This document shows, one piece after another, positions 3-51,886 of a DNA stretch of 64,000 bases. A model generated the notes under the pieces. That model had not been told where the DNA came from. It saw nothing but the letters and a program-made list of their open reading frames with translations, and ran no database searches. The DNA lies in the IMG/VR virus record IMGVR_UViG_3300042391_000634, positions 186,001 to 250,000 of that record; one strand, 5' to 3'. The translations under genes and the position numbers were made by a program. Numbering within the stretch: the first letter of the stretch is position 1; each line of letters starts with the position of its first letter.

Positions 3-1748
3 AATTTACAATTAATAAATTTTCCAGAGTGTGAAGAATGTGATGGAAGTAACACTGGTAATTGTACTATGTATGATAATGTTTATGATGATAATTTAGC
101 CACCGGATATTTTATTGATAATGGTTTAGGTGGAAGAACATACGTTGCAAATATAACAGTTGGTCAAACAATTGTAGGTGTTTTATTAGCGGGAGACAGC
201 ACCTATGTTCGTAGATCACAACCAACTTATGCGGGTGACCCAAATATTAGAGATATGGAAGGTGAAGTTTGGTATTTACAAGCTTTACCATTAAGTCATA
301 GAAGTGAATTTAGTAATGGTGTTTTTACTGTTGTTCCAGGAACACAAACAACATCTAGATTAACACAAATTTTAAAAGAATATTATAAAAGAAAAAGAGT
401 AGGTAAAATGTTTTGTGGAGGAATAGTCAATTATGGTTTTATTGATAATTGGTTATCTGGATCTTTATATTTTTTACAATTTAAAGTTAAAGGATTATCA
501 TCTGGAGTTGAAACATCCATAAGATATTGTAGAGATTTAGTTAGATTTGTGGGTAATGGTGTAAATAGATTTTATTACAGATCAGCACCATTTAATGGAA
601 GCAACTTTACATCTGTAAAACATCCTACAACATTTGTTGATTTAGGACCTAGAGATGAATTTATTAAAGAAATATGTGTTGATTCAACATTAGATCCAAA
701 CTGTTCAGTATCACGTTCAATTGGTGCAACATCTTATCAAGATATGGGTGAATTAATAGGGTTAGCAATTAATTATAGAATGGACGTTGCTGGTGTAAAC
801 GGAAATTTGGATATATTTTTTGATAATAAAGGTTTCTCAAGTAAAGTGTCGTTACCAAAAGTTTTAGATGGTGATATATTACAATTATTATCAATAAATA
901 ACGAAGTCGGAATAAAACAATTTGATTTACAAAGTTCAAGATATGTTGGGTATCAATTTAACTATTTAGATCCAGAAGAATATCCTGAATTTTTCAAAGT
1001 TAATGGTGATTGGGGTCCCCTACCTGTAACATTTGAATTAGATGAAGATGACGGTGAAAGAGTTAGATTATGTTTAAATGAACCAACACATTTAGGATAT
1101 ACGGGAAATGTAGTGCAAGGTAGATTAACAGAATCATCACAAAGAATACCATTTTATTTATGGGATAAAGGAGGACCTGGATTTGGCCCAAGTGGAATTA
1201 ATCAAAACAACCAATCTTGGGATTATGGAACATTACAGGTGCAACCATTACAAGGTATGACATATGGTTACAATATACCACATACATCACCAAATGATGA
1301 TAGTGACCCATATATGTTATTACCAATGACAAATAATTTTTCAGGTAAAACGGTAACAGGATTAGACCTTGTTAGTTCTATTGAATTTAATGTCATTTCC
1401 GCAAACGATAAAAACCCATCATACGATGGTGAATACCCTGGTTTTAGTTATTTATATGTTCCAGGTTGGAACGAGATTGATGAACCAACATCAGGGACGT
1501 TATATATAAGAGTTGGACCTGCTGAATATAACTCACCCGATAGTTTAGTAGTTAATGGTTGGCAAACAATATCATGGAACACAAGTGTGGATATAATTTT
1601 ACCATATAGAAAAGATTATTACGATGGAAATAAACAAATACTTTCAACCCCATTCCAATTTTATTTTGGATTAAATGCGGGTAAAACGGGTATGGATAAA
1701 TTTATTGACCTATTCGGTCCTAATGGGGCATTCCCAACTGCAGAATAA
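3..1748 (+). CDS. Virion structural protein, 5'-truncated by the window edge
   Basis: The frame stays open from position 3 (NLQLINFPECEECDG...) into the called ORF at 69. It is translationally coupled to the next gene (TAATG) and lies in the structural block. Confidence 0.6.
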   Translation, partial: NLQLINFPECEECDGSNTGNCTMYDNVYDDNLATGYFIDNGLGGRTYVANITVGQTIVGVLLAGDSTYVRRSQPTYAGDPNIRDMEGEVWYLQALPLSHRSEFSNGVFTVVPGTQTTSRLTQILKEYYKRKRVGKMFCGGIVNYGFIDNWLSGSLYFLQFKVKGLSSGVETSIRYCRDLVRFVGNGVNRFYYRSAPFNGSNFTSVKHPTTFVDLGPRDEFIKEICVDSTLDPNCSVSRSIGATSYQDMGELIGLAINYRMDVAGVNGNLDIFFDNKGFSSKVSLPKVLDGDILQLLSINNEVGIKQFDLQSSRYVGYQFNYLDPEEYPEFFKVNGDWGPLPVTFELDEDDGERVRLCLNEPTHLGYTGNVVQGRLTESSQRIPFYLWDKGGPGFGPSGINQNNQSWDYGTLQVQPLQGMTYGYNIPHTSPNDDSDPYMLLPMTNNFSGKTVTGLDLVSSIEFNVISANDKNPSYDGEYPGFSYLYVPGWNEIDEPTSGTLYIRVGPAEYNSPDSLVVNGWQTISWNTSVDIILPYRKDYYDGNKQILSTPFQFYFGLNAGKTGMDKFIDLFGPNGAFPTAE

Positions 1749-3631
1749 TGGAAAAGAAAGAAATATTATTACCGAGTAAAAGATACTTTAAGGCAGAAGA
1801 ACAAGATTTAAATCTTAGTGTTAAGTTAGATAATGATGAAACATTATTAAGAGAGGGAGATAAAGACATAGTATTAAATTTATCTGAATTATTTGATGAT
1901 GAAAGAAATGAATCAATTAATTATAAAATTTACGGTAAAATAAAAATGGTATTTAGAAACATGTATTCTGGATATACAGATTATACCCCTCTATTAAAAA
2001 ACTTATATTTAGTTGGTGATGGCACAGGTGATGATAAAGGATTTATACCATATAATGAATTTGCATTTTTAAGAAATGATGTTATCAGAGAAAATGTAAT
2101 ACCATCTACTGGATTAACATTGGGGAGTTCCAATGTTATACCAACAATAGAATTAACGGGAAATAGATATACAGGTCACACAACAACAACATCAATAGAA
2201 GCACCATATAAAAATTGGAATTTATATTTAAGTTATGTTTATAGTGGAGATACCACTCACCAAATGAAATATACATTATCTGGTAACACAACAGGATGTG
2301 GTGATGGTAAAACTTTTTGTTTCAACTCAGGAGACGGTATACCATTTAGAGTTGAAAGTAATGGAAATTATTATACATTAACGTCACCAGTTGAACATGG
2401 TTTGTTACAAGGTGAATACATTATATTATCCGGTGGAACTTATACGTCATATTCAGGTATAAGCACAGGTAAAACATTTTATACCATACCAATTACTTCA
2501 GATACTGAAAAATTTAGAATTTATTATATTGATAATGTTGGTAACGGTGTGTATAATTCAGAAAAATATGTAATTAACATATTAAAGAATGAATTTACAT
2601 CGGGTACAACATTGAGTTCAGTTGTTTTAGGTAGAAGATGTACCGACATTAACAATATAACAGGAACAACATCAACATATTACGTCCATAAACATAAAAC
2701 AATTACAAGTAAAGATGATTATATAATGGATAAGGTTGGATTTGAATCTTCCATTTTTGAAGACGAAAGAAAAATATTATTTGAAAATACATTACAAGAA
2801 AATGATATTTTAGTTGAAAGAAATAGACAAGAGTCTGTTTTATTTGATTTTAAAAAAACATTTGCACTATCTGGAATTACAAATAATTTAGGTTACACAC
2901 CAACTGAAGTTTATGTTAGTATTATTTTAAAAAATGAAAATGGATTATTTGACTATCCACCTAAAGTAGGTTATAAATTTAATTTTCATAACACATGGAT
3001 TGACCAACATTTTAGTGGAACAACATCAGTTGAAAAGGTTATGACTGGATTAACAGAAACATTTACAGGTAATACATCTGGTTACACATTTACAGGTGGA
3101 AAAACAATACCCATTGGAACAACAGGACTTACAGGTGCATTTGTTGAATATAATAGAAAAGAAATGAAAGAAAGGATTATTAGTGAATCATATCATAGAT
3201 TTTCACATAAACCTTTTATAAGTGGTTCAACACAATTATTTGACCACTTACAATACAGTGGAACAACTTTTTCTGGTGCGTCATTAAATAATATGGTTGG
3301 ATATTATTATCAACCACACCATAGAGTTAAATTAAGGGAGTTGTCACCATATATTGAAACATCAAAACTTGATGCGACACAACCAAATACTTTAATTGGT
3401 TTACCTGAAAATTCCATCTACGATCAAGATGAAAAACTTTGGAAATGGAGAGATTTATATGACCACGGATTTGTTGACCAAGAAGGAAATGGAACGACGT
3501 TCCCATTTATGAATAACATTCATTATGTTGTAAATGATATTAACTTTTATTTGAGAAGTGAACAAACATATTTTAATAAGGTAGATGGAATAAATGGATT
3601 TAATAATTATAAAAATAAAACTAACTGTTAG
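1748..3631 (+). CDS. Putative virion structural (baseplate/tail region) protein
   Basis: 627 aa ORF, coupled on both sides, rich in [ST]GxT motifs like its neighbours. Confidence 0.55.
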   Translation: MEKKEILLPSKRYFKAEEQDLNLSVKLDNDETLLREGDKDIVLNLSELFDDERNESINYKIYGKIKMVFRNMYSGYTDYTPLLKNLYLVGDGTGDDKGFIPYNEFAFLRNDVIRENVIPSTGLTLGSSNVIPTIELTGNRYTGHTTTTSIEAPYKNWNLYLSYVYSGDTTHQMKYTLSGNTTGCGDGKTFCFNSGDGIPFRVESNGNYYTLTSPVEHGLLQGEYIILSGGTYTSYSGISTGKTFYTIPITSDTEKFRIYYIDNVGNGVYNSEKYVINILKNEFTSGTTLSSVVLGRRCTDINNITGTTSTYYVHKHKTITSKDDYIMDKVGFESSIFEDERKILFENTLQENDILVERNRQESVLFDFKKTFALSGITNNLGYTPTEVYVSIILKNENGLFDYPPKVGYKFNFHNTWIDQHFSGTTSVEKVMTGLTETFTGNTSGYTFTGGKTIPIGTTGLTGAFVEYNRKEMKERIISESYHRFSHKPFISGSTQLFDHLQYSGTTFSGASLNNMVGYYYQPHHRVKLRELSPYIETSKLDATQPNTLIGLPENSIYDQDEKLWKWRDLYDHGFVDQEGNGTTFPFMNNIHYVVNDINFYLRSEQTYFNKVDGINGFNNYKNKTNC

Positions 3632-5034
3632 TGGAAATTTTAAAGAATAGTAATAATTTAAAAATAGTGATTAATACTGAAGAAAACTTCAGAACTGACT
3701 TAGGTTGGCAAGATAATCTTGCTCAGTTTGAGGATGAGGTTTTAAAAGATATTATTAATCCATCTAAGAATTATGAAACAGTTAGATACATACATAAACC
3801 ATATACCGGAACCACTTTATTAAAAGAACAAACAGATATATGGTTTCAATTTTATTTTGTTGATGGTAGTGATTATGTTTTAGATTACAATCCCGTCGGA
3901 ATTACCACACAGGAAAATGAATTAATGTTAAAACAAGCAACCGAAAGTTTTTTCAGATTAGAATTATTTAAAACACCAAGTGTAGTTTCACAAACAGGAA
4001 CTACATTAACATGTGAACCCCCAACAAGACAAAATAGAAGATTGGTTAATTCTAAAAATTTATCATTACCATTAGGTGAAAAGTTTTTTTATGTAACAGA
4101 AAATTCTGGTTATTTTATTCATATACCAGTTTTTAACGGGTCAAATTATAGAAACAAAGAAAACATGTATTTGTTTTGGTTTGATGACGAAAGTGCATTA
4201 ACCGATACAAATTTAAGTGGGACAACAACATTAGACCAATATATATTTGGAACGGGGTCCACAATACAAACTATTTTATTTACAAATGAAAATAATAATA
4301 TAACACAAGTAAATATACCAACAGGTGGAACAACATTAATTGGATGGACAGGACAAACATTTACAATTCCAAATATAGTAACTTATAATAGAAATTATTA
4401 TCATGGAATAAATACGTTTTTTATGACGGCAAAATTCTTTGATGCAAAAAATGGACAATTAATAGATTTTACAAATTCAGGATTTACAACAGGACATACA
4501 ATTACTGAGGAAAATGATATGTATTATCAAATTGATTTTGATAATTACGAAAGAACATATCAAATTTACAAATATACAGGAACAAAGGGAGTTAGAATTG
4601 GTAATGGGGTTTCTTCACCAATAAAGTTTTTTGAAAAAGGAGGAGCATCAATACCACCTACACCTACACCAACTCCTACACCTACAATAACACCAACACC
4701 AACGGTTACACCAACACCTGGCGCTCCAACATCAACACCAACTCCTACACCTACACCAACAAATACATTTCAAAATTATAATGGTATTGGAATTTATCCA
4801 TCTTCAGATAATTTAACTTGTTCAAACCATACAGAACAATTAAATGTTTTAATTTATTTAAATGATAGTGATTTTGATATTTATGAATCTACGGGTTATT
4901 TGACTAGTGGAATGGTAATATATGATAATAGTTCAGGAGATCCTTGGTATGTTTCAAATAAAGTATATGATTCAACAATCACTACCATCTTTAGTGTGAC
5001 AAGTGGTGTGTTAAGTGTTAATACATTATGTTAA
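3631..5034 (+). CDS. Structural protein with PT linker and C-terminal Cys-bounded module
   Basis: GTG start overlaps the previous stop. A PTPTPT tract is followed by a C...GMVIYD...C module. Confidence 0.55.
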   Translation: MEILKNSNNLKIVINTEENFRTDLGWQDNLAQFEDEVLKDIINPSKNYETVRYIHKPYTGTTLLKEQTDIWFQFYFVDGSDYVLDYNPVGITTQENELMLKQATESFFRLELFKTPSVVSQTGTTLTCEPPTRQNRRLVNSKNLSLPLGEKFFYVTENSGYFIHIPVFNGSNYRNKENMYLFWFDDESALTDTNLSGTTTLDQYIFGTGSTIQTILFTNENNNITQVNIPTGGTTLIGWTGQTFTIPNIVTYNRNYYHGINTFFMTAKFFDAKNGQLIDFTNSGFTTGHTITEENDMYYQIDFDNYERTYQIYKYTGTKGVRIGNGVSSPIKFFEKGGASIPPTPTPTPTPTITPTPTVTPTPGAPTSTPTPTPTPTNTFQNYNGIGIYPSSDNLTCSNHTEQLNVLIYLNDSDFDIYESTGYLTSGMVIYDNSSGDPWYVSNKVYDSTITTIFSVTSGVLSVNTLC

Positions 5035-5048
5035 AAATATAAAAATAA

Positions 5049-6233
5049 ATGAAAAGAAACGAATATACCATATTAAAAAGACAGATACCTGATGTTCATT
5101 TACATTCGGTTACAGGGTCATATTGGTTTGATAATCAAAATAACTTAATACCGTGGTCGGGAGATACGGGATTTTTACCAACGGGATACACACCATATAG
5201 TGGTTATGTCGTTAACAATGTAACAGGTAGTTTACCAACAGGTTCCTATATATGGAATGGAACTTCTTGGAGTGGATTGACAGGTAGTTTAAATCAAAGT
5301 TATAATTTACCAATAGTATTAAACGCGAGTGCGGATGAAATGGGAGTAATGTCTTCTTTTGATGGTAATATGGAACAAGTTGAACAGTTAGTTAATTTTA
5401 CATATAAACAATCAGGTTCGGCTGTAACAGTTTATAATACGGTTAATCCTGATAAGTTAAGAAAAATTGTAGACCAAAAATACACAATAAAATGGGGGGA
5501 TGGAACTTCAGGTTCGTTAGATGTAAACGGAGGAGTTTTGTATTCAAATTTTCCAACAGCATCACATACATATTCAGCAACAGGTAGTTATACTTTAAAT
5601 TTATTTTTAGATTCACCTTGGAGTAAAGAAAAAATAAATAAAAATATTACAGTTCCAAATACAGGGTCTGTAGTCCTTAATCCTTTAGGAACATTTAGTG
5701 GATTTACAATACCATATACCAATATAACAGGTTCTTTAGACTATATAAATGAATCAAAATTTTCTGGTTTCACAGGTTCAACCATTTTAAAATACATGGC
5801 AATAGGTGGTAGTAAAATAGGTGAATTAAGAAAATATGGAGAAACAACACTTAATAGTTCAATGTATGTTACAGGATTATTTTCAGGTTCAGCTTATACC
5901 GGATATACATTGGATACGGGTAGCATTATTAGTGGTAGTTTAGATATTACTAAAATACCTACCGGTAGTTTATGGTATATGGATTTTGCGGACGGATACA
6001 CTATGGTAACAGGTAAAACTACCAATTTTACCAAAGAAGAGGTTATTAATAATGTTATTACAAGGAACGAACATTTCTTAGGTTTTATTGACGACCCAAA
6101 CGTATATTCTGACATTTTTGTTGAAAGAGGACGACAAGGAGTGATGGAACCAAACCTAAGATTAGGTGAAATTGATAACATGAGTGAGTTAGAAGTTTAT
6201 GGAAATGGATATTTTAAAGTGAGAAAACAATAA
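5049..6233 (+). CDS. Structural protein with PKD-like domain
   Basis: YTIKWGDGT...SHTYSATGSYTLNL matches the PKD-domain signature (WGDG, H-x-Y-xxxG-x-Y). Confidence 0.55.
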   Translation: MKRNEYTILKRQIPDVHLHSVTGSYWFDNQNNLIPWSGDTGFLPTGYTPYSGYVVNNVTGSLPTGSYIWNGTSWSGLTGSLNQSYNLPIVLNASADEMGVMSSFDGNMEQVEQLVNFTYKQSGSAVTVYNTVNPDKLRKIVDQKYTIKWGDGTSGSLDVNGGVLYSNFPTASHTYSATGSYTLNLFLDSPWSKEKINKNITVPNTGSVVLNPLGTFSGFTIPYTNITGSLDYINESKFSGFTGSTILKYMAIGGSKIGELRKYGETTLNSSMYVTGLFSGSAYTGYTLDTGSIISGSLDITKIPTGSLWYMDFADGYTMVTGKTTNFTKEEVINNVITRNEHFLGFIDDPNVYSDIFVERGRQGVMEPNLRLGEIDNMSELEVYGNGYFKVRKQ

Positions 6234-6239
6234 GAATTA

Positions 6240-6247
6240 TATTTATA
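6240..6247 (+). promoter_or_regulatory. TATTTATA putative late promoter
   Basis: Motif recurs upstream of structural genes; 10 nt before ATG 6258. Confidence 0.55.
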
Positions 6248-6257
6248 ATAAAAGTTT

Positions 6258-7178
6258 ATGGCAGTAGGATCATACGGAGTAATTAGACCAGCAGATGTAT
6301 CACCAGATGACGTAGAAATTCTATATCATTATGCGGCTGATAGAGTCTCAACAACCGCAGTAACATTAAAGAAATTAACGTCAAATCAGGTTTTAACCCC
6401 GATTTTACATACAGGAACAACAACAACCGACACGGCCGCAGTTGGAACTGAAATATTAGGTGGATTATATAATCTATTATTAAGTGCGGACGATTTTAGT
6501 GATTTAGGGATTTATACACTTTATATAAGACCAAAACAAATAAGAACCACAGTTACAGATTGTGGTATTTTAGCGTCCCTACCTTCAGTTAGAGGTGTTG
6601 TTATTGATTTATCAAATGTCCCATCCGCAGATAGAAACAAATTTACACCACAAGGTTTAGTTGGTTATAGAGTTGAATACATCAATCCAAACGATAATAA
6701 GAAATTACCTAACTTTTATAAGATAGTAACATCTTCTTTTTATTGCACACCTGTAACAGCAAATTTAAACACAACAACACAAAAGTCAGTAAGATATCAA
6801 TATAGTGAAGGTGCAACAAACTTTATGTTTTTAACGGTTACACCGTCATCTGCACCATCAAACAAACCAAATACGGTTCCATTTATTGGAAGTCCAGGTC
6901 AAAAGATAATCTTATCAAACACATATTTCAATCCAACAACAATACAAATTGATATGGTTGAACATGACGCTTCAACACTTGCAAATGCTCTTTACGGTAA
7001 TCAAACTAAGGCGGTTACACCAGGTATTTACACAATTTACGATAAAGACAATAACATATATAAACAATATAACTTATTTGAAATCAAAGACGACTTTAAT
7101 GATACTCTTTATGAGGTTAGAGAAACTCGTACCGATATTGATGAAACTTTAAACTTTGATACAATTACCAATATCTAA
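6258..7178 (+). CDS. Putative baseplate-associated structural protein
   Basis: 306 aa ORF preceded by TATTTATA and coupled to the baseplate wedge-like gene. Confidence 0.5.
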
Positions 7179-10100
7179 TGGCAAAATATAAAGTTCCAAG
7201 TCAAGCTGCAAGTGGTGCTGATACATTCAGTGACAATCTAGTAGGTAATCAAATTACCACAGGTACTGGTCAATTGACTAATACGAACTTTGCGTTAGAT
7301 AGTGAGGTTATACAACGAGATACAAAGAAATTTAAAACAAACCCATTTTCGGATTTTTTAACTTTAGACGATTTAAAGAAAGAAACCTCAGCTTTATCTA
7401 CAGATGAGATTGCAAAAAGAAAAAAAGAAATAAAATTTAAAGGTTCAAAAGGTGATGCGGGTAAATCTTTATTTGGTTCATTAAAAAGTAGATTAGGTGT
7501 TTCAACACAAAACATAATTATTAATTTTCCTGCTGGAATTTTAATTGATTCAAATAGTTTTATTAGTGTTAGTGGATTAACTGCAACAGGTATTGAGTAT
7601 AATAAATTAAATGATACAACTCAATTTGATGTTGAGTTTAGTATGTTATACAATCCATTTTCTTTAATACTATTAAAACCAAAAAGTAAGGATTTAACAA
7701 CATCTACAAATTCAACAAGAGATTTTTATAGTTCATATACAAAATATGTTATTACGGTTAGTGGTAAAACTTATAATATAACAAATTACACCGAACCGAA
7801 TAGTAATAATATTATAAAATTAAAAGTAAGTGGTAAACCATTTACCGATACAACATATTCAGAAGATATTTTAATTAGACCAAATGACGGAGTAGTTGAT
7901 GAATTTTTTAATGGATTAGATGATTTAGAAGAAACATTATTAAATAGGGATAGTTCTCCAATCTACACCGCTAGTTTCAAAGTTCCAAGAGATAGTTTTG
8001 ACCAAACAAAAACAGAATTAATTTCCGTTAATTATAGTTGGCCAATATCTGATAAAGATAATTGGAATATTAAAATTGCGGGTTTAGAATATGAGGATTA
8101 TTTAAGAAAATTAAGTGATATTGCTGATGAGATAGATGATTACAAATCAAATTTATTTGTAAGATTTTTAACATCCCCACAATTATTTGAGTTTGATTCT
8201 CCAGATAAAAAGGCGGAAGCAATTTTTCAATTGTATGGTCAATCGTTTGATAAAGTAAAAAAATACATTGATAATATTGCTAACATGAGAAATGTTAGTT
8301 ACGACGGAATTAATAATGTTCCCGATGTTTTATTAAAAAACTTAGCAAATACATTAGGATTAGATACTGTTAATTTAATAGATGAAAAAGGTTTAGATGA
8401 ATTATTATATACAAAGACATCACAACAATATTCAGGATTAGTTTCAGGAACATCATTATTAGATGCTGAGTTTGAATTTTATAGAAGGTTATTGGTGAAT
8501 TTAGCTTACATTTATAAATCAAAAGGAACAAGACAATCATTAGAATTCTTTTTAAGATTTTTAGGTGCTCCTGAACCATTGATTAAAATTAATCAATATG
8601 TTTATAAAATTACATCATATCCAAAATCATTTAATTTAGAGGATGATATCTATAATGCGGTTACAGGAAGAAATGTTATAAAAACTGCGGTATTTTTACC
8701 AACGGGTGGAACAATAGATGGTGTGGTTTATACAGGATATTCATACTATATAAAATCAACAACAGGTTCAACATCATTAAGTATTGATGGATATCCCGTA
8801 GATTCAGTTACGTTACAACCAAAATCAGTAACAGGTTCAACAGATTTGTTTTTTCAAAAAGGTTCTGGATGGTATGATAATACGGCAAGTCACAAATCAC
8901 CTTTGATACTTGACCAAGATTTATCAAGTGGAACAACTGTAGATGGTAATTATGTTTTAACGGGAAGAACAAAAACTGTTATTACTAAAAATAGTAGATA
9001 CACATACGGAGAAGATTATTTTGACATATATAGAACATTACCTGGATTAGATACGGGATTTGAATTACAAACATTAATCGATAATAGTCAAACCGAATTA
9101 CTTGGGGACGATTCACGTTTAATTTTAAATCGTAAAAACATTGAAGTTTATTTATCATCCGCACAAGCGGTTGATTTTGACATATACCGTAAATCAAGAG
9201 ATTTAGAATTAACATTCGGAACAAATAGTTTAACACCACAAACGGGAGTAACTTTTGCAGAATATGTTGATTTAATGTTACATCAACAAATTAAAAATTC
9301 TCATATTATAAGATATAAAAAGAATTACATTACATTAGAGGACATATACCAAGATTACATAACAAATAAACACGGATTAAATTTTAATTATACACCATAC
9401 ACTTTCCCTGACATTAATTTGTTTATTGAGAAAATGAGTCCATATTGGACAAGTGTAATAGACCAAATTATACCTTCAACAACATTATGGACTGGAGGTA
9501 ATTTAATTTCAAATAATATTTTTGGAAGACCAAAATATCAATATAAATATGGATGTCAACCAATTGAAATAGTTGATAATTTATATCCTGAAATACCAAG
9601 TGGATATACTCAATATTTTGAAGACGTTATTGATGAATATGATAATGATATATTCACCGAAATCAACTCAATTGGAGAATATAAATACGACGGACGAATT
9701 TATATATTTCCAACTTTTGAAATAAACGGCGTAACCTATTCTGGAACAACAGGAAACACATCATCAGTTACAAGTATTACCGGATTAACATATGTTTTAT
9801 TATCGGGTATAACAAATACAACAAATAGTGCTAAGTTATATGAACCTGATGGTAGTGGAAATGCTTATGCGATGATTAGTGGTACCACAAATACTATTAG
9901 TCCTGATTATGATAAAGTAGAAGATTTGTGGCAAACGGCAATTTTAAATACTATTGAATATATAAATAATTGCACCGATTGTTTATATTCAGGAAATACA
10001 ATTGATAATGTGGGTTATATAAGTTCATATGCACCATTTACGGGTGCAACAGGAATTACAATAACGCCAATAAAAATTAGAAAAAAATTATTAACGGGTA

Positions 10101-12865
10101 AAATTTTCATTGATAATAATGGAGAAGAAAAAATTAAATTAACATCATTTAAATATGGACCTAATGATTGTACAAAAAATATATATGTTGATTTAACCGC
10201 ACGTGCATTTACTGACACTTATGATTGTTCATTAGGACAAGGGTCGGCTGAATGGAAGTTATCAACTCCAACTCCAACCCCAACTCCGGCACCAACCTCA
10301 ACACCAACGGTAACACCAACACCAGTACCAACCTCGACTCCAGTACCAACCTCAACACCAACGGTAACACCAACAAGTACTCCGGCACCAACCGGAACAC
10401 CAACACCAACACCTACTATTACACCAACACCAACGGTAACACCAACACCAACACCAATTCCATGTAATTTTACAATTGAATATACTGCATTAATATCAAC
10501 CCCGACCCCTACACCAACTGTTACACCAACACCAACTGTTACACCAACACCAATTCCATGTAATTTTACAATTGAATATACTGCATTAATATCAACCCCG
10601 ACTCCGACCCCTACTATTACACCAACACCAACGGTAACACCAACCCCAATTCCATGTAGTTTTACAATTGAATATACCGCATTAATTTCAACACCAACCC
10701 CAACACCTACTATTACACCAACACCAACGGTAACACCAACCCCAATTCCATGTATCTTTACAATTGAATATACTGTATTAACACCAACACCAACCCCTAC
10801 ACCAACTGTTACACCAACACCTACACCTAGCATATGTCAAAGACCAACGGGGTTACCTTGGGATATTATTAATTACGCATATAAAATAAATTCGGGAGAT
10901 TCATACACTAACTTCACGTCATCATTACAAGCGGCTTGTGACGCATTAACAGCAATTAGATTGGCGGAACAAACTCAACTTGTTAATTCGGTACTCGGAA
11001 TAACTTTCAATGCTGATCCAGCGGTACAACTTGGAGCAACATTATATAATAATAATTCAATAACAACTTGTGATAAAGTACAATCGGGTTATTATATATA
11101 CGATTTAAGTGGTTTTCAAACGTACATTTTAGGTGTTGGAAGTGATGGATTGGTTACATATTTTGGTGATTGTACGTTAACAACAAATACCCCAACCCCA
11201 ACACCTACGGTTACACCAACACCAGAACCAACTAGTACTCCAACAGTTACACCAATTCCATGTAATTTTACTATTGAGTATACCGTATTAATATCAACCC
11301 CAACCCCAACACCTACTTCAACAAGTACACCAGCACCAACTGAAACACCAACCCCTACACCAACTGTTACCCCAACATCAACACCTACATGTGTGGTAAC
11401 AACATATAATTCATTATTTAGTGGAACTACTTCAGAAAATGCTTGTAATAATATAACACAATATGTGCCGGATGCGTGGGTGTGTATTTTGAATGATAGT
11501 TATTTACAAATTGGTGAAGCTTGGTATACGAATATTAATCTTACAACACCATATCCTGATGGATATTATTGTTTCCATAATGAAACACTTGGGTTTAATA
11601 ATACGTGGGTTTATATTGTAAACGGTTTAATTGATTCTACCGGATTATGTCTGACACCAACAAATACACCGACCCCAACACCTACGGTTACATCAACACC
11701 TGCACCTACTGGCACTCCAACACCAACACCAATTCCATGTAATTTTACAATTGAATATACTGCATTAATATCAACCCCAACCCCAACTCCAACACCATTA
11801 CCAACTAGTACACCAACAGTAACGCCAGATCCAACTAGTACTCCAACAGTAACACCTAACCCAACTAGTACCCCAACAGTAACACCTAACCCAACTAGTA
11901 CCCCAACAGTAACACCTAATCCTACTAGTACACCATTACCAACTAGTACCCCAACGATTACACCAGAACCAACTAGTACACCATTACCAACTAGTACACC
12001 AACGGTTACACCAATTCCGTGTAACTTCACCATTGAATACACTGCATTAATATCAACTCCAACACCAAATCCAACTAGTACACCAACAGTAACACCAAAT
12101 CCAACTAGTACACCAACAGTAACACCAAATCCAACTAGTACACCAACAGTAACGCCAGATCCAACTAGTACACCAAATCCAACTAGTACACCAACAGTAA
12201 CGCCAGATCCAACTAGTACACCAAATCCAACTAGTACACCAACAGTAACGCCAGATCCAACTAGTACACCAAATCCAACTAGTACACCAACACCAACACC
12301 ATTACCAACATCCACACCAACTGTTACACCAACACCTTGCCCATCAGAAGGTACTTTTTTAATGTCTACTTGTGTTGGTTATGATTTATATTACAGATTC
12401 GCGAATGGTAGTTGTGGTACGTATGACACATTTATTGAAAGTAATTCCTCAAGTTGTGGTTATGTTGCACCAACACCCACCCCAACCCCAACCCCATTAC
12501 CGGACGGAGTTTTAAGTTTTGGATCCACAGATGGTGGGTTCATACAGTGTGGAGCGGGTTACGATTCTAATGACTATGAATATTATAGAACATATGAGGT
12601 TATTTTTACGAGCGCACGAAATACGATGGGATATGTTGTTGTCTATTTAAGCGATAATTCAAGTATACAAATACCATTTAATGAAAATGATACCTCCGCA
12701 TCTACAACCATTTTCTGTGGATGTGGATCATCATGTGCGGACATACAATATGTAATGAATATAATATACACCACACCAACCCCAACACCAACAGCGGAAC
12801 CAACATTTACACCAACTCCGACACCAGAAGGAGGTGGAGGACAGGACCCCCTTGAACCTATATAA
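7178..12865 (+). CDS. Baseplate wedge-like protein (P2 gpI/T4 gp7-like region) with long PT-repeat C-terminal extension
   Basis: [14 protein letters not shown]...[28 protein letters not shown] resembles the Tail_P2_I-type motif. The C-terminal ~870 aa consist of PT linkers, 7 PIPCxFTIEYT peptides and Cys modules. Confidence 0.6.
10262..12340 (+). repeat. Pro-Thr coding repeats with 7 interspersed PIPC(N/S/I)FTIEYT(A/V)L units
   Basis: ACACCA-type codon repeats and near-identical ~45-nt units (ccaattccatgtaattttacaattgaatatactgcattaatatca). Confidence 0.9.
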
Positions 12866-12890
12866 AATAAAATAAAATAAAATAAACAGA

Positions 12891-12898
12891 TATTTATA
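12891..12898 (+). promoter_or_regulatory. TATTTATA putative late promoter
   Basis: Intergenic, upstream of ATG 12915. Confidence 0.5.
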
Positions 12899-12914
12899 AA
12901 TATAAATTAAAATT

Positions 12915-13652: not shown

Positions 13653-13700
13653 TAAAACACTTTATTATAAGGGGTTTTTTGTTTAATTTCTATATAATAC

Positions 13701-13708
13701 TATTTATA
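13701..13708 (+). promoter_or_regulatory. TATTTATA putative late promoter
   Basis: 4 nt before ATG 13713. Confidence 0.5.
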
Positions 13709-13712
13709 GAAT

Positions 13713-14366
13713 ATGTCCGAATATTTTAATGCTGAAGTTAATATAGGTAAAAAGAGTAACTCAATTGAAAAAGTTAGTTTATACGCATGTTCTGGATCAA
13801 CGGAAGCAACATGTGACCCAACACCAATATCTGGTTATAATGGTATTCTATGGACAGATACAAAATTTTCACCACTTTTTGAGAGTGGTTCATATCCATC
13901 ATTATCAGGATTGGTAACATTTATAACTGGATTAACGTTATACACACATATATATATTAGAGTATTAACAACATCAAGTTATAATGGAAGTTGTATACGT
14001 AGTAATATGATACCAATTATTGGTATCCCAACTCCAACAGCAACACCATTACCAACCTCTACACCAACACCAATACCATGTAGTTTTGACGGAACCATTG
14101 TTTATGGATTACCTGTTACCCCAACTCCTACACCAACACCATTACCAACCTCAACACCAAACCCAACTAGTACACCAACCTCAACACCAAACCCAACTAG
14201 TACACCAACCTCAACACCAAACCCAACACCAACTAGTACACCAACTGTTACACCAACAGCAACAACATTAAGTGGGCCTTATTTTAACTCAATAGGATTA
14301 GCTTATAGCCCAAGTAATCCAAATAAATGTCAAGCATATACTTGTTATAATAATTTAACAACATAA
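13713..14366 (+). CDS. Virion accessory protein with PT linker
   Basis: Shared N-terminal domain, a [12 protein letters not shown] peptide, a PT tract, and a short Cys-containing C-terminal segment. Confidence 0.55.
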
Positions 14367-14384
14367 TTTAAAAAAAAATAATAT

Positions 14385-14705
14385 ATGAGTATACTATGTG
14401 AGTTAGTCACTTTTTATCATAATTTATCGGCAGGATCAAACGGAAATTCACTATTGAATGAAACTTTGTATGGTGACACATCAGGTGGTACAATAATGGA
14501 TGGATATTATTCCGATGGAACATATATCTACACCGTATCGGGAAGTCTTGTTACATATGTTGAAACTGCAGCTTCATTAGGATGTCAAGGTACAACACCA
14601 GAACCAACCGTAACACCAACACCACAAGGATATTCACAACAATTGGGTTATGGAACATCCTCAAATAACGCATGTATTTTCTACACCGGACCAATTGAAG
14701 GGTAA
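14385..14705 (+). CDS. Small Cys-module protein (apparent domain fragment)
   Basis: LYGD...GYYSDG...V...C, then a PT linker and LGYGTSSNNAC. Confidence 0.5.
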   Translation: MSILCELVTFYHNLSAGSNGNSLLNETLYGDTSGGTIMDGYYSDGTYIYTVSGSLVTYVETAASLGCQGTTPEPTVTPTPQGYSQQLGYGTSSNNACIFYTGPIEG

Positions 14706-14726
14706 CCACTTTAAAAATAAAAAACA

Positions 14727-14951
14727 ATGTCAGCAGGAACTTTACAATTTTATTCTAATTACGAAACATTACCAACGGCATTATTCGACGATGATATGAA
14801 CCCATTATCACCAACGCCAATTATGTATACAAATATTAACATGACTAGTACAGCAAATAATGGTTATTATTCAAATGGTGTCAATTGGTGGAGAGTAACA
14901 GGTGGTGCAGGAGTAATAACAGATACCGGTGTTTGTCCGGCGGTTGATTAA
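14727..14951 (+). CDS. Small Cys-module protein (apparent domain fragment)
   Basis: MYTN...NGYYSNG...VTGGAGVITDTGVC; A-rich start region. Confidence 0.5.
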   Translation: MSAGTLQFYSNYETLPTALFDDDMNPLSPTPIMYTNINMTSTANNGYYSNGVNWWRVTGGAGVITDTGVCPAVD

Positions 14952-14965
14952 AATAAAAAAAGAAA

Positions 14966-15934
14966 ATGTCAATACCAGTAACAATAACATTAAACACAAT
15001 AGTAGGAACACCAGGTCCTTTTAGTTTATATTCATGTATTGAATCGACTTGTTCGGGTTCATTAACACCATTTGTAACAGGAGTGTCGTTATCTGATTTA
15101 CAAACTGGTAGTTTAGTTCCTGATATTAGCGGAAATACACCTACTTACGTTAAAATTAAATCTACAGGAGGAAGTTGCGCGTATGAAATTATTAAACCAA
15201 TAACAGGAATACCTACGGTAACTCCAACTCCAACACCAACCATAACACCAACACCTGGTTCAACTAGTACCCCAACTCCAACTCCAACTCCAACAGCAAC
15301 AACGGGAACATGTGTACCTAAAGAATATAACATAACAGCTAACGGTAATTTCTATTGGATTGATTGTGAAGGAAATGACAGATATAGTTATTTTACAACT
15401 GCAGATAGTCCAATATGTATTTGTAGTTCAAGTAATTTACCAATATCGTTAGATGGTGGAACAGGAACATTAGCGGGCGGTGGATGTGAATGTAATCCAG
15501 TAACACCAACTCCAACACCGACAGTTACACCAACACCAACCCCAACACCAAACTATTATAATGTAAAAGTTAAATTAGTAGGTATGATGGGTACCAGTGG
15601 GAATTTAACGGTACGTCAATCATCAGATGGTATAACATTTATAAATTCAGTAACAATAACTACCACAGATAACGATGTTGCTCAACAGTCCTTTAACGGT
15701 ACACCAGGTTATTATTATTACTTTATAGTTGCAAGAACTTCAGGTAATTCTGATAGATTGAATTGGTATACCCAAGTATTCCCATCCGACTTCAATCCTG
15801 GATCGATAGCTGATGCCGGTTGCACTTCACTTGGAGGAGCAACATTACAATCAGAGACTTTCCAATTACCAAATCCGACACAAAGTGTATCTGAAGTGTT
15901 ATTTTATGGAGATATAAGTGACGCATGTCTATAA
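14966..15934 (+). CDS. Virion accessory protein with PT linkers and Cys-rich modules
   Basis: N-terminal GPFSLYSC...TGVSLSDL...KIKSTGGSC domain, two PT tracts and a WIDCEG module. Confidence 0.55.
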   Translation: MSIPVTITLNTIVGTPGPFSLYSCIESTCSGSLTPFVTGVSLSDLQTGSLVPDISGNTPTYVKIKSTGGSCAYEIIKPITGIPTVTPTPTPTITPTPGSTSTPTPTPTPTATTGTCVPKEYNITANGNFYWIDCEGNDRYSYFTTADSPICICSSSNLPISLDGGTGTLAGGGCECNPVTPTPTPTVTPTPTPTPNYYNVKVKLVGMMGTSGNLTVRQSSDGITFINSVTITTTDNDVAQQSFNGTPGYYYYFIVARTSGNSDRLNWYTQVFPSDFNPGSIADAGCTSLGGATLQSETFQLPNPTQSVSEVLFYGDISDACL

Positions 15935-15950
15935 TAAAATTAAACAAAGA

Positions 15951-15958
15951 TATTTATA
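15951..15958 (+). promoter_or_regulatory. TATTTATA putative late promoter
   Basis: 4 nt before ATG 15963. Confidence 0.5.
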
Positions 15959-15962
15959 ACAT

Positions 15963-18041
15963 ATGAGTTTTTTAAATAGTAATAATTCGGAGTTCTTGTC
16001 AGCAAGAATAACCAATAGAGGTAGAAAGGCAATAGCCAAAGGTAGTTTCAATATTGAATATTTTCAAATTGGGGACTCTGAATATGATTACACAACACCA
16101 TTCACAAACTTAACGGGAACCACAGGTCACCAAAAAGTGTTTGCACCATTTGATTATGATGCGGGTGTAAAATACCCACTTTCATTAGATTCGGATCTTA
16201 CAACAACTTATGGACAACCAATATCAAATAGTGAAACGATTAAATTAAGAAATGAAATGGGTGCTGGTGGATTTGTATCACAATATTCAAGTGCTCCAAT
16301 AGTAAAAACCGAAACTCAACAAATTGCATATACCAAAATAAGTGGAACAACAAGTTTAGTTGTTCCGACTGGAGTAACATTTAATGATTGTGAATATATT
16401 ACAATAGTATTTGATAGTTTTTCAACCAAAACAATAACAGGACAAACAAATAGTTTAATTTATAAAGTATTATCTATTAGTGGAAACACATTAACATTAG
16501 ATCGTAACACACCAAACTTAGCGACTTTAACCGGTAATGCACAAGTTGTTTGTAACAAATGTTTAATAGAAGAACAAACTGACGACGTATTCAATCCAAT
16601 TGATTACACAGGCCAATTAAATTCGTGGACATTAAACACGGTATGGACAGAAAAACCAATCGGTGGTGATTATAATGGAACAGATGAAAGTCTATCTGGA
16701 TATACAAGTAATCAATATGTATCAATCAAAAATTTATTAGGTTATACTAAAACAGGACAAACATTTAATAATTTAACAGGAGGAACAATAACAGGAACAA
16801 CATTTAAAAATTCGTTTGATGAATTAATACAAGTTTCACCGTCAGAACAAAGATGTATTGCAATAGTTCATTATTCTGAATTGGGAGATATAGTTGTTGA
16901 CCCCGAAAGATTTTTTAAATATGATGATTACATAAGTTCATTAACAGGAACAACCGGAACGAGTATTTCGTTATTTAATGAGTTAGATGGCGCAGATAGA
17001 GACTACGATAAAAGTGATAGTGAATATTTTGAAGTTTATATTCCATTTATTTATTATCATAGAAATACAGGAACAACATTAGGTGCTTTATTTACAATGG
17101 ATACAACTGATTATTATATTAATTCATCAATTAACTCAAGAAATCAACTTAAGTTTAGATTTTTAGTTGACGAACAAAATAATAAAGTGGGTAAAGTTTT
17201 TGTGAATAATAAAATAATCGTATTTGATGACCAAGAATTGGTTGCGATGTTAGATTATAGGTCAAATAGAAGATACACATTACCATCACCAAAATTAGGG
17301 TTATCATCAAGTGACGGAGTTGCCGCACAATCTATGGTAACAACTACAGGAGATACGGCTTGGGTTACATATATGTTTGAAAATACAAGTGGTAATACTT
17401 TAAATTCATTCCCTTGTAATTATTTTAATAAAATTAGTGGTAATGGAACACCATCACAAATAATGTTTAAATTTAGTGGTAACTCATTTTCCAATATGGC
17501 AACAACGTTAAGTGGAGTAAAAGATGGTTATGTTGCAAATAAATTTTACGCATTAGTTCAAACAGGAACAACACCAACACCAAATTTATGGAAAAAAATA
17601 GATATCACTTCACAAATACCAAGTTATACAAGTGGTTATATTAACCCAACAAGTTTAACGGGAGTATCATTTACAATATCTTATTCAGGTTATACAGGTG
17701 CAACCGCATTTGATTTTGAAGACCATATGTCAGGAGTAACTTCCGATTATCTATGGAACACAACAGGTTCAACAACACAACCTCAATTCGGTGACGAACA
17801 ACCATTCCCTGGTAGTGTTAGATTGGTTAGAGCAAGTGATATTGAAGAGATGAATATGATAATTAACTTACCGTCCACACAATTTACAACAACTCAAAAT
17901 CCAACGTATACTTCTGGAGATAAATACATTACCGAAGTTGCATTATTAGATTCTAATAAGGAACCGTTAGTTGTTGCAAAAACACCGACACCCGTTAAAA
18001 GAGCAGGAACTCAAGTGTTTGCTATCAGATTAGATTTCTAA
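15963..18041 (+). CDS. Baseplate/tail-fibre attachment protein (DUF3751-like termini)
   Basis: N-terminal ARITNRGRKAIAKG..IEYFQIGDSE and C-terminal YITEVALLD...LVVAK..PVKR...RLDF resemble tail-collar/baseplate proteins of large myophages. Confidence 0.55.
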   Translation: MSFLNSNNSEFLSARITNRGRKAIAKGSFNIEYFQIGDSEYDYTTPFTNLTGTTGHQKVFAPFDYDAGVKYPLSLDSDLTTTYGQPISNSETIKLRNEMGAGGFVSQYSSAPIVKTETQQIAYTKISGTTSLVVPTGVTFNDCEYITIVFDSFSTKTITGQTNSLIYKVLSISGNTLTLDRNTPNLATLTGNAQVVCNKCLIEEQTDDVFNPIDYTGQLNSWTLNTVWTEKPIGGDYNGTDESLSGYTSNQYVSIKNLLGYTKTGQTFNNLTGGTITGTTFKNSFDELIQVSPSEQRCIAIVHYSELGDIVVDPERFFKYDDYISSLTGTTGTSISLFNELDGADRDYDKSDSEYFEVYIPFIYYHRNTGTTLGALFTMDTTDYYINSSINSRNQLKFRFLVDEQNNKVGKVFVNNKIIVFDDQELVAMLDYRSNRRYTLPSPKLGLSSSDGVAAQSMVTTTGDTAWVTYMFENTSGNTLNSFPCNYFNKISGNGTPSQIMFKFSGNSFSNMATTLSGVKDGYVANKFYALVQTGTTPTPNLWKKIDITSQIPSYTSGYINPTSLTGVSFTISYSGYTGATAFDFEDHMSGVTSDYLWNTTGSTTQPQFGDEQPFPGSVRLVRASDIEEMNMIINLPSTQFTTTQNPTYTSGDKYITEVALLDSNKEPLVVAKTPTPVKRAGTQVFAIRLDF

Positions 18042-43186: not shown

Positions 43187-43200
43187 TATAGAAAAATAAA

Positions 43201-48096: not shown

Positions 48097-48167
48097 ATAA
48101 AACAAATCATTAATAAAAATATATTAAAAAAAACATAGAATTAATACGAGGATAGGTAATAACAAAG

Positions 48168-51879: not shown

Positions 51880-51886
51880 GAGTACT

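What the first reader, a model, noticed from the sequence alone, without database searches (positions are those of the whole stretch)
1748..18041. [S/T]-G-x-T motif saturates virion proteins: candidate phage O-glycosylation sequon, with a second [S/T]-G-S dialect
Seen: in the non-repetitive 627-aa protein at 1748, about 17 of about 25 SG/TG dipeptides continue as [ST]GxT (SGYT, TGLT, TGHT, SGDT, SGNT, SGTT...; hand count). The protein at 15963 has about 18, and 3631 and the 7178 N-terminal half are similar. The motif is rare in the replication and metabolic genes at 18-40 kb. Gene 5049 and the 43-59 kb fibres instead favour TGS/SGS. These sites sit in unrelated sequence contexts, so they are not tandem duplications. 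Inference: convergent accumulation of a short motif in virion proteins suggests a modification signal, such as dense O-glycosylation by a phage glycosyltransferase to shield the particle. It differs from the known Bacteroidota D-(S/T)-(A/L/V/I/M/T) sequon. No glycosyltransferase lies in this window.
Basis: partly seen in the sequence, partly recalled or inferred. Interest (0 to 1): 0.72.

Follow-up and report, generated by a model that had tools for sequence, protein, structure and literature searches.

The report
Thr/Ser-Gly-x-Thr motif saturating phage tail proteins
A sharply defined four-residue motif, [Ser/Thr]-Gly-x-Thr, occurs about ten times more often than chance in the tail, baseplate and fibre proteins of an uncultivated 335-kb jumbo phage and its relatives; it looks like a tag read by some phage-specific factor, possibly a sugar-attachment site, but no modification has been shown.

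Summary
[ST]GxT occurs 17, 18, 8, 8 and 18 times in the proteins at 1748, 15963, 3631, 5049 and 7178. Shuffles predict 1.1, 1.5, 1.0, 0.8 and 4.7. It is near zero in the replication genes.

Selection acts on the protein, since both Ser codon families are used. The motif is not inherited by paralogy. It is strict: only S/T at position 0, only G at +1, only T at +3. D, N, V and I are not enriched. T4 tail proteins lack it (17 observed, 11.4 expected).

Relatives keep the density while sites turn over. The tail sheath's outer domains carry it too.

The "[ST]GS dialect" is 79% collagen-like Gly-X-Y repeats. A smaller real [ST]GS-hydrophobic motif remains.

The genome, outside the window, holds about 13 glycosyltransferase genes. 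Two are true TibC/Aah-type protein O-heptosyltransferases. That island is absent from two relatives that keep the motif. Two core glycosyltransferases sit among nucleotide-metabolism genes.

A glycosylation sequon is therefore plausible but unproven (about 0.4). A lineage-specific structural turn motif is the main rival (about 0.35).

The parts
1748..3631 (+). 627-aa baseplate-module protein with 17 [ST]GxT sites. The gene lies two genes downstream of a gp6-like baseplate wedge gene.
   Evidence: 17 observed against 1.1 expected. The AF2 model has pLDDT 83.8 and no PDB fold match. 120 homologues at 64-94% identity carry 9-19 sites. Distant homologues carry 0-9, mostly 0-4. The wedge gene was identified.
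3014..3133 (+). Motif-dense variable beta-meander of the 1748 protein (aa 423-462), with 6 motif copies. Sites turn over among homologues here.
   Evidence: DSSP shows short strands at 436-440, 447-451 and 459-469, with motifs at the junctions.
3631..5034 (+). 467-aa protein with 8 [ST]GxT sites.
   Evidence: 8 observed against 1.0 expected. Orthologues in G001 and G002 have 2/0.1 and 5/0.2.
5049..6233 (+). 394-aa protein carrying both flavours: 8 [ST]GxT and 14 [ST]GS-hydrophobic sites.
   Evidence: 8/0.8 and 14/0.8. No collagen-like run; the residue after [ST]GS is L/Y/A/V. Sequence shown.
7178..10237 (+). N-terminal 1020 aa of the 1895-aa protein, with 17 [ST]GxT sites.
   Evidence: 17 observed against 1.9 under local shuffles. 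Orthologues have 19/1.4 in G001 and 20/2.6 in G002.
10268..12865 (+). C-terminal half of the same protein. PT-rich linkers alternate with a repeated Cys-containing '[15 protein letters not shown]' module. Only 1 [ST]GxT site.
15963..18041 (+). 692-aa tail-module protein with 18 [ST]GxT sites.
   Evidence: 18 observed against 1.5 expected. In 120 homologues, 12 sites are kept in at least 80% of sequences, and about 5-6 sites per homologue sit in other columns. Weak Prophage_tailD1 hit, below the Pfam cut-off. The AF2 model was poor.
40505..59424 (+). Four fibre genes (40505-43186, 43201-48096, 48196-51798, 55699-59424) with long collagen-like (G-S/T-S)n runs. These are the source of most [ST]GS.
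   Evidence: Sequences. 399-633 collagen-like residues per protein, with 273 of 341 [ST]GS inside the runs. [ST]GxT is not enriched across the whole proteins.

Best explanation
[ST]-G-x-T is a short linear motif kept by selection at the protein level on the outer parts of the contractile-tail apparatus. The proteins involved are the sheath's accessory domains, peripheral baseplate proteins and fibres, in a broad lineage of uncultivated ~30% GC jumbo myoviruses.

The motif is strict, is specific to this lineage, and is maintained in number while sites move. I therefore infer that something outside the protein fold reads it. The most likely reader is a phage-encoded glycosyltransferase working in the cytoplasm. 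It would attach sugar to the Ser/Thr at position 0 (or the Thr at +3) at strand-loop junctions before or during tail assembly.

Shown: the enrichment, its specificity, its distribution, its evolution, and the presence of about 13 glycosyltransferase genes including two TibC/Aah-type protein O-heptosyltransferases.

Inferred: that any site is modified, which enzyme does it, and what the modification is for (shielding, solubility or receptor contact).
For: (1) Enrichment of 7-15x survives global shuffles, local shuffles and anagram controls.

(2) Ser is encoded by both TCN and AGY, and Thr and Gly by several codons each, so the motif is not a DNA-level feature.

(3) Specificity: position 0 is S 10.9x and T 9.6x, but D 0.9x and N 0.8x. 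Position +1 is G only. Position +3 is T 10.1x, against S 1.7x, V 1.3x and I 0.9x. A generic Asx/ST turn or a preference for beta-branched residues would also enrich D/N or V/I.

(4) Folding physics is universal, yet 18 T4 tail, baseplate, fibre and head proteins show 17 sites against 11.4 expected.

(5) The carriers are unrelated in sequence.

(6) Enrichment is limited to the virion's outer parts. All 7 sheath sites lie in aa 35-602, outside the conserved sheath core at 653-963. The gp6-like wedge has 0.

(7) Homologues keep 9-19 sites spread over 55-66 different alignment columns. About 5 per homologue sit in columns where the query has none.

(8) In the confident AF2 model most sites lie in coil next to a strand. 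Aah/TibC enzymes glycosylate the first residue of the loop in a strand-loop-strand element (PMC3835316).

(9) Glycosyltransferases: two proteins pass NCBIfam TIGR04414 (264 and 282 bits, cut-off 200). They match TibC at E about 1e-50 and keep the catalytic Asp, Lys230, Trp305 and all four iron-finger Cys. Two further glycosyltransferases are conserved across the clade.
Against: - There are no mass-spectrometry or other data on modification.
- The TibC-like genes lie on an accessory island. It is missing from G001 (76% complete) and G002 (86% complete), while genes on the island's downstream side (306-310 kb) keep their order in G001. Both relatives keep strong enrichment.
- Close homologues of the TibC-like protein are far fewer than those of the 1748 protein.
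- AIDA-I, a known substrate of that family, is enriched in SGG (25/3.3) and not in [ST]GxT (4/3.5). TibC was found to modify Ser but not Thr (PMC4358343).
- The Ser:Thr ratio at position 0 is the same in genomes with and without the island.
- The clade-wide glycosyltransferases sit among dUTPase, PhoH and a late-sigma-like gene, so they may act on DNA. The 407-aa one is equally present in the distant clade, where enrichment is only 3-4x.
- In a G002 fibre the motif is part of an obvious repeating structural unit, LTGLTINGDLSVSGDTNLN.
- At least one site (x-G-x-T near residue 74) is conserved across the whole protein family.
Confidence: 0.4

Rival explanations
1. The motif is purely structural. 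It would be a strand-capping or turn element (hydrophobic residue, then [ST]-G-x-T, then hydrophobic residue) that this lineage's beta-rich tail proteins have come to favour, with no modification. Gly would allow a turn or bulge, and the two hydroxyls would make side-chain-to-backbone hydrogen bonds.
For: - Sites sit at strand ends or starts in the AF2 model.
- Position -1 is usually L/Y/I/F/T.
- Many sites are conserved in position. In the 15963 family 12 columns are kept in at least 80% of sequences, and motif triplets are more conserved than other triplets (0.77 against 0.50).
- In fibres the motif lies inside repeated structural units.
- The related [ST]GS-hydrophobic motif occurs in fibre shafts.
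- No writer enzyme tracks the motif.
Against: - D/N at position 0 and V/I/S at +3 are not enriched, unlike known Asx/ST turns.
- T4 tail proteins do not use the motif.
- The same fold in distant homologues works with 0-4 sites rather than 9-19.
- Sites occupy mixed structural positions: strand exit, strand entry and open coil.
- About 5 sites per homologue lie in new columns.
Confidence: 0.35
2. In this particular phage the two island-encoded TibC/Aah-type O-heptosyltransferases are the writers for [ST]GxT. They would add heptose that the island's GT2/GT4 enzymes and methyltransferases then extend.
For: - Both proteins are true family members.
- The family acts in the cytoplasm on a Ser (or Thr) at the start of a loop in a strand-loop-strand element (PMC3835316). 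Its E. coli substrate shares the Ser-Gly core.
- The island also carries GT2, GT4, GT1, methyltransferases, an epimerase/dehydratase, a radical SAM enzyme and a 2OG-Fe(II) oxygenase.
Against: - The motif is clade-wide but the island is not.
- SGG is nearly absent from the motif-rich proteins.
- In both this genome and its near relatives, a fibre gene directly follows the second TibC-like gene in the island.
- Both the island and the Ser/Thr-rich collagen-like fibres are missing from G001. The fibres are therefore the more economical target.
- Arg286 of TibC is Ile in both phage proteins, and Thr226 is Gly in one.
Confidence: 0.12
3. The motif is read by something other than a glycosyltransferase. 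Candidates are a different modification (for example phosphorylation), a tail-assembly chaperone, or a shared contact with a host surface polymer.
For: The same arguments for an outside reader apply. No glycosyltransferase correlates with motif density.
Against: No candidate kinase, chaperone or binding partner was identified. Sites are too many and too scattered for a single binding interface.
Confidence: 0.12
4. The enrichment is an artefact of composition, repeats, paralogy or a DNA-level signal.
For: The proteins are rich in Thr, Ser and Gly.
Against: Global shuffles, local shuffles and anagram controls all fail to reproduce it. Codons vary. No paralogy was found. TG.T and SG.T rank highest in the unbiased scan apart from PT linkers.
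Confidence: 0.01

Closest known systems
Aah/TibC autotransporter O-heptosyltransferases (BAHT family) and their substrates AIDA-I and TibA
   Same: Substrates are all-beta proteins destined for the outside of the cell. They are glycosylated densely in the cytoplasm. The acceptor is the first residue of a loop in a strand-loop-strand element, often Ser followed by Gly, as in NSGG (PMC3835316, PMC4358343). This genome encodes two family members.
   Different: The substrates here would be phage tail proteins, not autotransporters. The motif is [ST]-G-x-T, with Thr as common as Ser and a strict Thr at +3. AIDA-I shows SGG and no [ST]GxT enrichment. The enzymes are absent from relatives that keep the motif.
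Mycobacteriophage virion glycosylation (Freeman et al. 2023, as summarised in PMC12619734)
   Same: Phage-encoded glycosyltransferases modify virion proteins, and a shielding role has been proposed.
   Different: There the glycans sit at the C-termini of the capsid and tail-tube subunits. Here the candidate sites are a dispersed tetrapeptide on sheath, baseplate and fibre proteins. The major capsid protein has only 3. No modification has been shown here.
Bacteroidota general O-glycosylation sequon D-[ST]-[ALIVMT]
   Same: A three- to four-residue Ser/Thr sequon on surface proteins.
   Different: The sequence differs and there is no Asp preference at -1. That system acts in the periplasm, whereas phage tails assemble in the cytoplasm (established knowledge). 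The host of this phage is unknown.
Collagen-like Gly-X-Y phage fibres; glycosylated G-x-T triplets of Bacillus BclA (from memory, not tested)
   Same: The 40-59 kb fibres are Gly-X-Y repeats rich in Ser/Thr. G-x-T is also the core of the dispersed motif.
   Different: The dispersed motif is not in triplet register and needs Ser/Thr before the Gly.
N-x-[ST] sequon turnover in viral glycan shields (analogy only)
   Same: Number is maintained while positions turn over.
   Different: Different chemistry, different enzymes and different viruses.

Membership tests
BAHT / TIGR04414 autotransporter strand-loop-strand O-heptosyltransferase (the two island proteins, genome 286,337-287,467 and 291,982-294,105) | Score above the curated equivalog cut-off, with a near full-length match to TibC | tested here: met
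   264.2 and 281.9 bits against a cut-off of 200. phmmer against TibC 4RAP gave E 9.5e-51 (aa 13-369) and 2.8e-52 (aa 370-700).
BAHT / TIGR04414 | Catalytic base Asp110, plus Lys230 and Trp305 | tested here: met
   All three are conserved in both phage proteins, in Aah and in 7 environmental homologues. Residue roles are from PMC4358343.
BAHT / TIGR04414 | Sugar-binding Arg286 and Thr226 | tested here: not met
   Arg286 is Ile in both phage proteins and I/L/V in the environmental homologues. Thr226 is Gly in protein 1 and kept in protein 2. The donor sugar may therefore differ from, or be bound differently than, in the E. coli enzymes.
BAHT / TIGR04414 | Four-Cys iron finger (Cys339, 342, 358, 370) | tested here: met
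   All four are conserved in both proteins.
BAHT / TIGR04414 | Paired with an autotransporter substrate gene | tested here: not met
   The neighbours are glycosyltransferases, methyltransferases and a collagen/Peptidase_S74 fibre. On an E. coli plasmid, aah is followed directly by aidA.
BAHT / TIGR04414 | Heptosyl transfer to Ser of a protein | not testable with these tools
   Needs enzyme assays or mass spectrometry.
O-glycosylation sequon (the [ST]GxT motif itself) | Covalent glycan on the motif's Ser/Thr | not testable with these tools
   No proteomic data. The phage is known only from metagenomes.
O-glycosylation sequon | A writer enzyme that co-occurs with the motif | tested here: inconclusive
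   The TibC-like island is absent from G001, G002 and G003. A GT2 (259 aa) and a 407-aa glycosyltransferase are present in all genomes examined, including the low-density clade.
Generic Asx/ST-turn structural motif | Asp/Asn can replace Ser/Thr at the first position | tested here: not met
   D 0.9x and N 0.8x against S 10.9x and T 9.6x.
Bacteroidota D-[ST]-[ALIVMT] sequon | Asp directly before the Ser/Thr, and an aliphatic residue or Thr after it | tested here: not met
   Position -1 is T/L/Y/I/F and position +1 is always Gly.
Collagen-like triple-helix repeat (fibres at 40-59 kb) | Long uninterrupted Gly-X-Y runs | tested here: met
   399-633 residues per fibre lie in runs of at least 5 triplets. 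The island's fibre has a Pfam Collagen hit at E 1.6e-16. Pfam was not run on the window's fibres.
'Moraphage' aquatic jumbo phages (PMC12619734) | Heat-shock (DnaK-type) genes reported in all members; genomes up to 307 kb | tested here: not met
   No HSP70 match in the genome. The genome is 335.6 kb. Marker phylogeny was not done.

The most novel reading that the evidence does not exclude
A widespread lineage of uncultivated jumbo phages coats its tail sheath, baseplate and fibres through its own sequon-directed cytoplasmic O-glycosylation system. The sequon is [ST]-G-x-T and the writer is one of the lineage's core glycosyltransferases. Some members have added a second layer: a TibC/Aah-type heptosylation island that modifies Ser/Thr-rich collagen-like fibres. 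This would be the first protein-glycosylation sequon defined for a phage.
Probability: 0.25. Interest if true: 0.85.

Novelty: new variant of a known kind. Interest (0 to 1): 0.62.

Why it matters
If the motif is a glycosylation sequon, a sequence scan could predict virion glycosylation. It would also show that large environmental phages run their own protein-glycosylation programme on the parts of the particle that meet the host and the environment. That bears on host recognition, particle stability and grazing or immune recognition.

Even if the motif is structural, it is an unusually strict, lineage-specific rule. It is easy to test and is not used by T4.

Separately, TibC/Aah-type protein O-heptosyltransferases are so far known as partners of bacterial autotransporters. 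Here they appear in a phage island next to a fibre gene, which suggests a new class of substrates for that family.

Tried and rejected
- **DNA-level motif:** rejected because codons vary.
- **Composition or local composition:** rejected.
- **Paralogy or a hidden shared domain:** no similarity among the carriers. Pfam and PHROGs gave almost nothing for them.
- **Generic turn preference:** rejected by the D/N and V/I tests and by the T4 control.
- **TibC-like enzymes as clade-wide writers:** rejected.
- **Core 407-aa glycosyltransferase tracking motif density:** it does not; it is present in 5 of 5 low-density genomes.
- **Core glycosyltransferases inside a morphogenesis module:** no; their neighbours are dUTPase, PhoH and a late-sigma-like gene.
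- **Fold of the 1748 protein:** no convincing PDB match. Foldseek E >= 0.018; the best VIA-align Z of 6.4 covers only a small beta-barrel at aa 196-300. BFVD found only an uncharacterised homologue.
- **Structure of the 15963 protein:** pLDDT 53.9, not used.
- **Solvent exposure:** not computable, as model coordinates are not provided.
- **Cultured relatives:** none in GenBank phages for the 1748 protein.
- **Moraphage identity:** not supported.
- **Technical failures:** one related-loci run failed and was repeated. A single-protein scan with a distant homologue found nothing, so an alignment was used instead.
- **Complex prediction:** not run. An enzyme-substrate pair of this kind is unlikely to score, and I do not claim stable binding.
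- **Literature searches for a described phage sequon:** nothing relevant found.


Full report
**Setting.** The window is bases 186,001-250,000 of a single 335,630-bp contig with 31% GC. IMG/VR holds it as a virus record, and CheckV rates it 100% complete. It is a contractile-tailed jumbo phage.
- A tail sheath gene lies at genome 154,870-157,767.
- A major head protein gene lies at 124,971-126,746.
- A gp6-like baseplate wedge gene lies at 182,469-184,301.
- The genes in the finding follow that wedge gene directly, so they belong to the baseplate/tail module.
- No GenBank phage matches the region at DNA or protein level.
- Metagenomes hold more than 1,000 homologues each of the 1748 and 15963 proteins, on contigs up to about 347 kb.

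I called 403 ORFs and shuffled each protein 300 times. Observed/expected counts of [ST]GxT are:

| Protein (window start) | Observed | Expected | Note |
|---|---|---|---|
| 1748 | 17 | 1.1 | z 15.7 |
| 15963 | 18 | 1.5 | z 14.2 |
| 3631 | 8 | 1.0 | |
| 5049 | 8 | 0.8 | |
| 7178 | 18 | 4.7 | 17 sites in the first 1020 residues |

Three more proteins outside the window are enriched: a 519-aa protein (8/0.8), the sheath (7/1.2) and a 1947-aa protein (10/1.5). The replication and metabolism genes at 18-40 kb have 4 sites in total, against about 2.4 expected.

Stricter nulls do not change this. With shuffling inside 20-residue windows, the observed count still exceeds the maximum of 500 shuffles in all eight proteins. 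Same-composition anagrams such as T.G[ST], G[ST].T and [ST].GT give 8-14 copies, against 93 for [ST]GxT. An unbiased scan of gapped patterns puts SG.T and TG.T at the top once the PT-linker patterns of the 7178 protein are set aside.

**What kind of signal it is.**
- Ser at position 0 uses both TCN and AGY codons, and Gly and Thr use several codons each. Selection is therefore on the protein.
- The carriers share no detectable similarity (all BLASTP E > 0.01), so the motif arose independently in each.
- The motif is strict. Position 0 is S (10.9x) or T (9.6x), while D and N are at 0.9x and 0.8x. Position +1 is Gly only. Position +3 is T (10.1x), with S at 1.7x, V at 1.3x and I at 0.9x. Position +2 takes almost anything except Pro.
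- Half of all [ST]G dipeptides in these proteins continue as x-T.
- Position -1 is usually hydrophobic or Thr.

**Structure.** An AF2 model of the 1748 protein built from 72 homologues is confident (pLDDT 83.8, pTM 0.82). It is a multi-domain beta protein with no convincing match in the PDB. In BFVD it matches only an uncharacterised homologue. Eleven of 17 motif starts are in coil, and most sit within three residues of a strand. Some are at strand exits, some at strand entries, and several are in a beta-meander at residues 423-470. Coordinates are not exposed to scripts, so I could not compute burial. The 15963 model was too poor to use. In the sheath, all 7 sites lie in residues 35-602, outside the conserved sheath core at 653-963.

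**Evolution.**
- The 120 closest homologues of the 1748 protein (64-94% identity) carry 9-19 sites.
- Across them the motif occupies 55 alignment columns, and only 5 are kept in at least 80% of sequences. Homologues share about 9-10 of the query's 17 sites and have about 5 elsewhere.
- In the 15963 family there are 66 columns, 12 of them conserved. Motif triplets there are more conserved than other triplets (0.77 against 0.50).
- Number is therefore maintained, many sites are under purifying selection, and new sites keep appearing.
- I fetched two relatives whole. G001 is 233.6 kb and 76% complete. G002 is 286.8 kb and 86% complete. Their 1748 orthologues are 54-57% identical to the query. Both keep strong enrichment in the same orthologues, for example 19/1.4 and 20/2.6 for the 7178 orthologue.
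- In a more distant clade (G005 at 322 kb, G006 at 272 kb, 29-30% identity) the same orthologues still show 3-4x enrichment, and some fibres more.
- Distant 1748 homologues carry 0-9 sites, mostly 0-4.
- As an outgroup, 18 T4 tail, baseplate, fibre and head proteins show no enrichment: 17 against 11.4 for [ST]GxT, and 7 against 11.0 for [ST]GS.
- The motif is therefore a graded trait of this phage lineage, not a general property of myovirus tails.

**The second 'dialect'.** The four fibres at 40.5-59.4 kb contain long collagen-like runs such as GSSGTSGSSGTSGSNG. Across these four and the island's fibre at genome 294,170-296,197, 290 of 368 [ST]GS lie inside runs of at least five Gly-X-Y triplets. 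That part of the finding is ordinary tandem repetition. Outside the runs, [ST]GS is still 4-9x enriched and is followed by L/V/I/F. The 5049 protein has 14 such sites and no collagen run. A second, smaller motif, [ST]-G-S-hydrophobic, is therefore real.

**Glycosyltransferases.** The two GT family searches (GT2, GT1) found none in the window, but the genome has about 13.

A roughly 23-kb island at genome 283-306 kb carries:
- a 2OG-Fe(II) oxygenase
- a GDSL-type hydrolase
- a radical SAM enzyme
- a 376-aa and a 707-aa TibC-like protein
- a GT4-FkbM fusion
- several methyltransferases
- a collagen/Peptidase_S74 fibre
- an Anp1-like GT, two GT2 proteins and a GT2_4/GT92 protein
- an epimerase/dehydratase
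- two GT1 proteins

Both TibC-like proteins pass the NCBIfam equivalog model for autotransporter strand-loop-strand O-heptosyltransferases. They match TibC at E about 1e-50. They keep Asp110, Lys230, Trp305 and the four iron-finger cysteines. Arg286 is Ile in both, and Thr226 is Gly in one (residue roles from PMC4358343). Homologues of the 376-aa TibC-like protein are rare in GenBank phages: one Microcystis phage and three uncultured phages of 636-735 kb.

This family glycosylates the first residue of a loop in a strand-loop-strand element (PMC3835316). In TibA one mapped site is the Ser of NSGG (PMC4358343). AIDA-I has SGG at 25 against 3.3 expected, but [ST]GxT at only 4 against 3.5.

**Does a writer track the motif?** No.
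- The whole island is absent from G001, G002 and G003, although genes on its downstream side (306-310 kb) keep their order in G001.
- Close homologues of the TibC-like protein are few.
- The Ser:Thr ratio at position 0 is the same with and without the island, and SGG is nearly absent.
- In near relatives the island is conserved, and there too a large gene, presumably a fibre, directly follows the second TibC-like gene.
- The Ser/Thr-rich collagen-like fibres have no orthologues in G001. The island's likeliest substrates are therefore those fibres, not the dispersed motif. This is inference.
- A GT2 (259 aa) and a 407-aa glycosyltransferase (phrog_7162, distantly like phi92 gp164) are conserved in all genomes examined. 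They lie next to dUTPase, PhoH and a late-sigma-like gene, so a role in DNA modification is equally possible.

**Weighing.** Three things favour an outside reader over an intrinsic folding preference: strict hydroxyl specificity, restriction to one lineage, and maintenance of number with turnover. Glycosylation is the most plausible such reading, given the gene content and the strand-loop context.

Against this, no writer correlates with the motif. Many sites are conserved in position. In fibres the motif is part of a repeating structural unit.

My estimates are:
- glycosylation-type sequon: about 0.4
- purely structural motif: about 0.35
- TibC-like enzymes as the writers in this phage: about 0.12 (a special case of the glycosylation reading, so these figures are not additive)
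- some other reader: about 0.12
- artefact: about 0.01

I found no description of this motif, or of a phage protein-glycosylation sequon, in the searchable literature. Virion glycosylation itself is known from mycobacteriophages (as cited in PMC12619734).

Noticed in passing
window 10268-12865 (C-terminal half of the 7178 protein): Long Pro-Thr linkers ([14 protein letters not shown]) alternate with about nine copies of a Cys-containing '[15 protein letters not shown]' module. TP.P occurs 96 times against 4.2 expected. PT-rich linkers are classic O-glycosylation targets in bacteria (from memory).
   Followed up: partly
outside the window: genome 283,010-306,040 (L014:10-20000, L015:402-3040): A protein/glycan-modification island of about 23 kb. 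It carries two TibC/Aah-type O-heptosyltransferases, about eight other glycosyltransferases, methyltransferases, a radical SAM enzyme, a 2OG-Fe(II) oxygenase, a GDSL hydrolase and an embedded collagen/Peptidase_S74 fibre. It is conserved in near relatives, which also carry four 2OG-Fe(II) oxygenases and a carbamoyltransferase (L128, L129). It is absent from G001 and G002. Its likely substrates are the Ser/Thr-rich collagen-like fibres.
   Followed up: partly
window 40505-59424: The four fibre genes have 37-40% GC against about 30% elsewhere. Three (43201, 48196, 55699) have no orthologue in G001 or G002. The N-terminus of the first matches a G002 fibre that has no collagen run.
   Followed up: partly
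GenBank phages PP395634.1 (7366-8427) and LR756501/LR756503/LR756504: TibC-like genes also occur in Microcystis phage Mel-JY01, where the gene is annotated as an FkbM methyltransferase, and in three uncultured phages of 636-735 kb. LR756501 also has a homologue of the 407-aa core glycosyltransferase.
   Followed up: no
window 5049-6233, about aa 146-176: By eye, 'KWGDGTSGS...SHTYSATGSYTLNL' resembles the PKD-domain signature (WDFGDG...HtY..pGtYtV). Pfam gave no hit at E <= 0.01.
   Followed up: no
G002 (L111:3809-8017, minus strand; genome 223,809-228,017): A 1402-aa fibre with 35 [ST]GxT sites. Some lie in a repeated unit, LTGLTINGDLSVSGDTNLN. It also has YadA-head-like 'SNFIGxxAG' repeats.
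   Followed up: no
outside the window: genome 133,469-140,014 (L016): A core block conserved in order in five genomes. It places a GT2 and a 407-aa glycosyltransferase beside a late-sigma-like gene, PhoH and a dUTPase/dCTP-deaminase-like gene. This hints that these enzymes may modify DNA rather than protein.
   Followed up: partly
window 18081-18689 and 15963-18041: A RuvC-like Holliday junction resolvase follows the tail module directly. The 15963 protein has a weak, sub-threshold Prophage_tailD1 match at aa 370-425.
   Followed up: no
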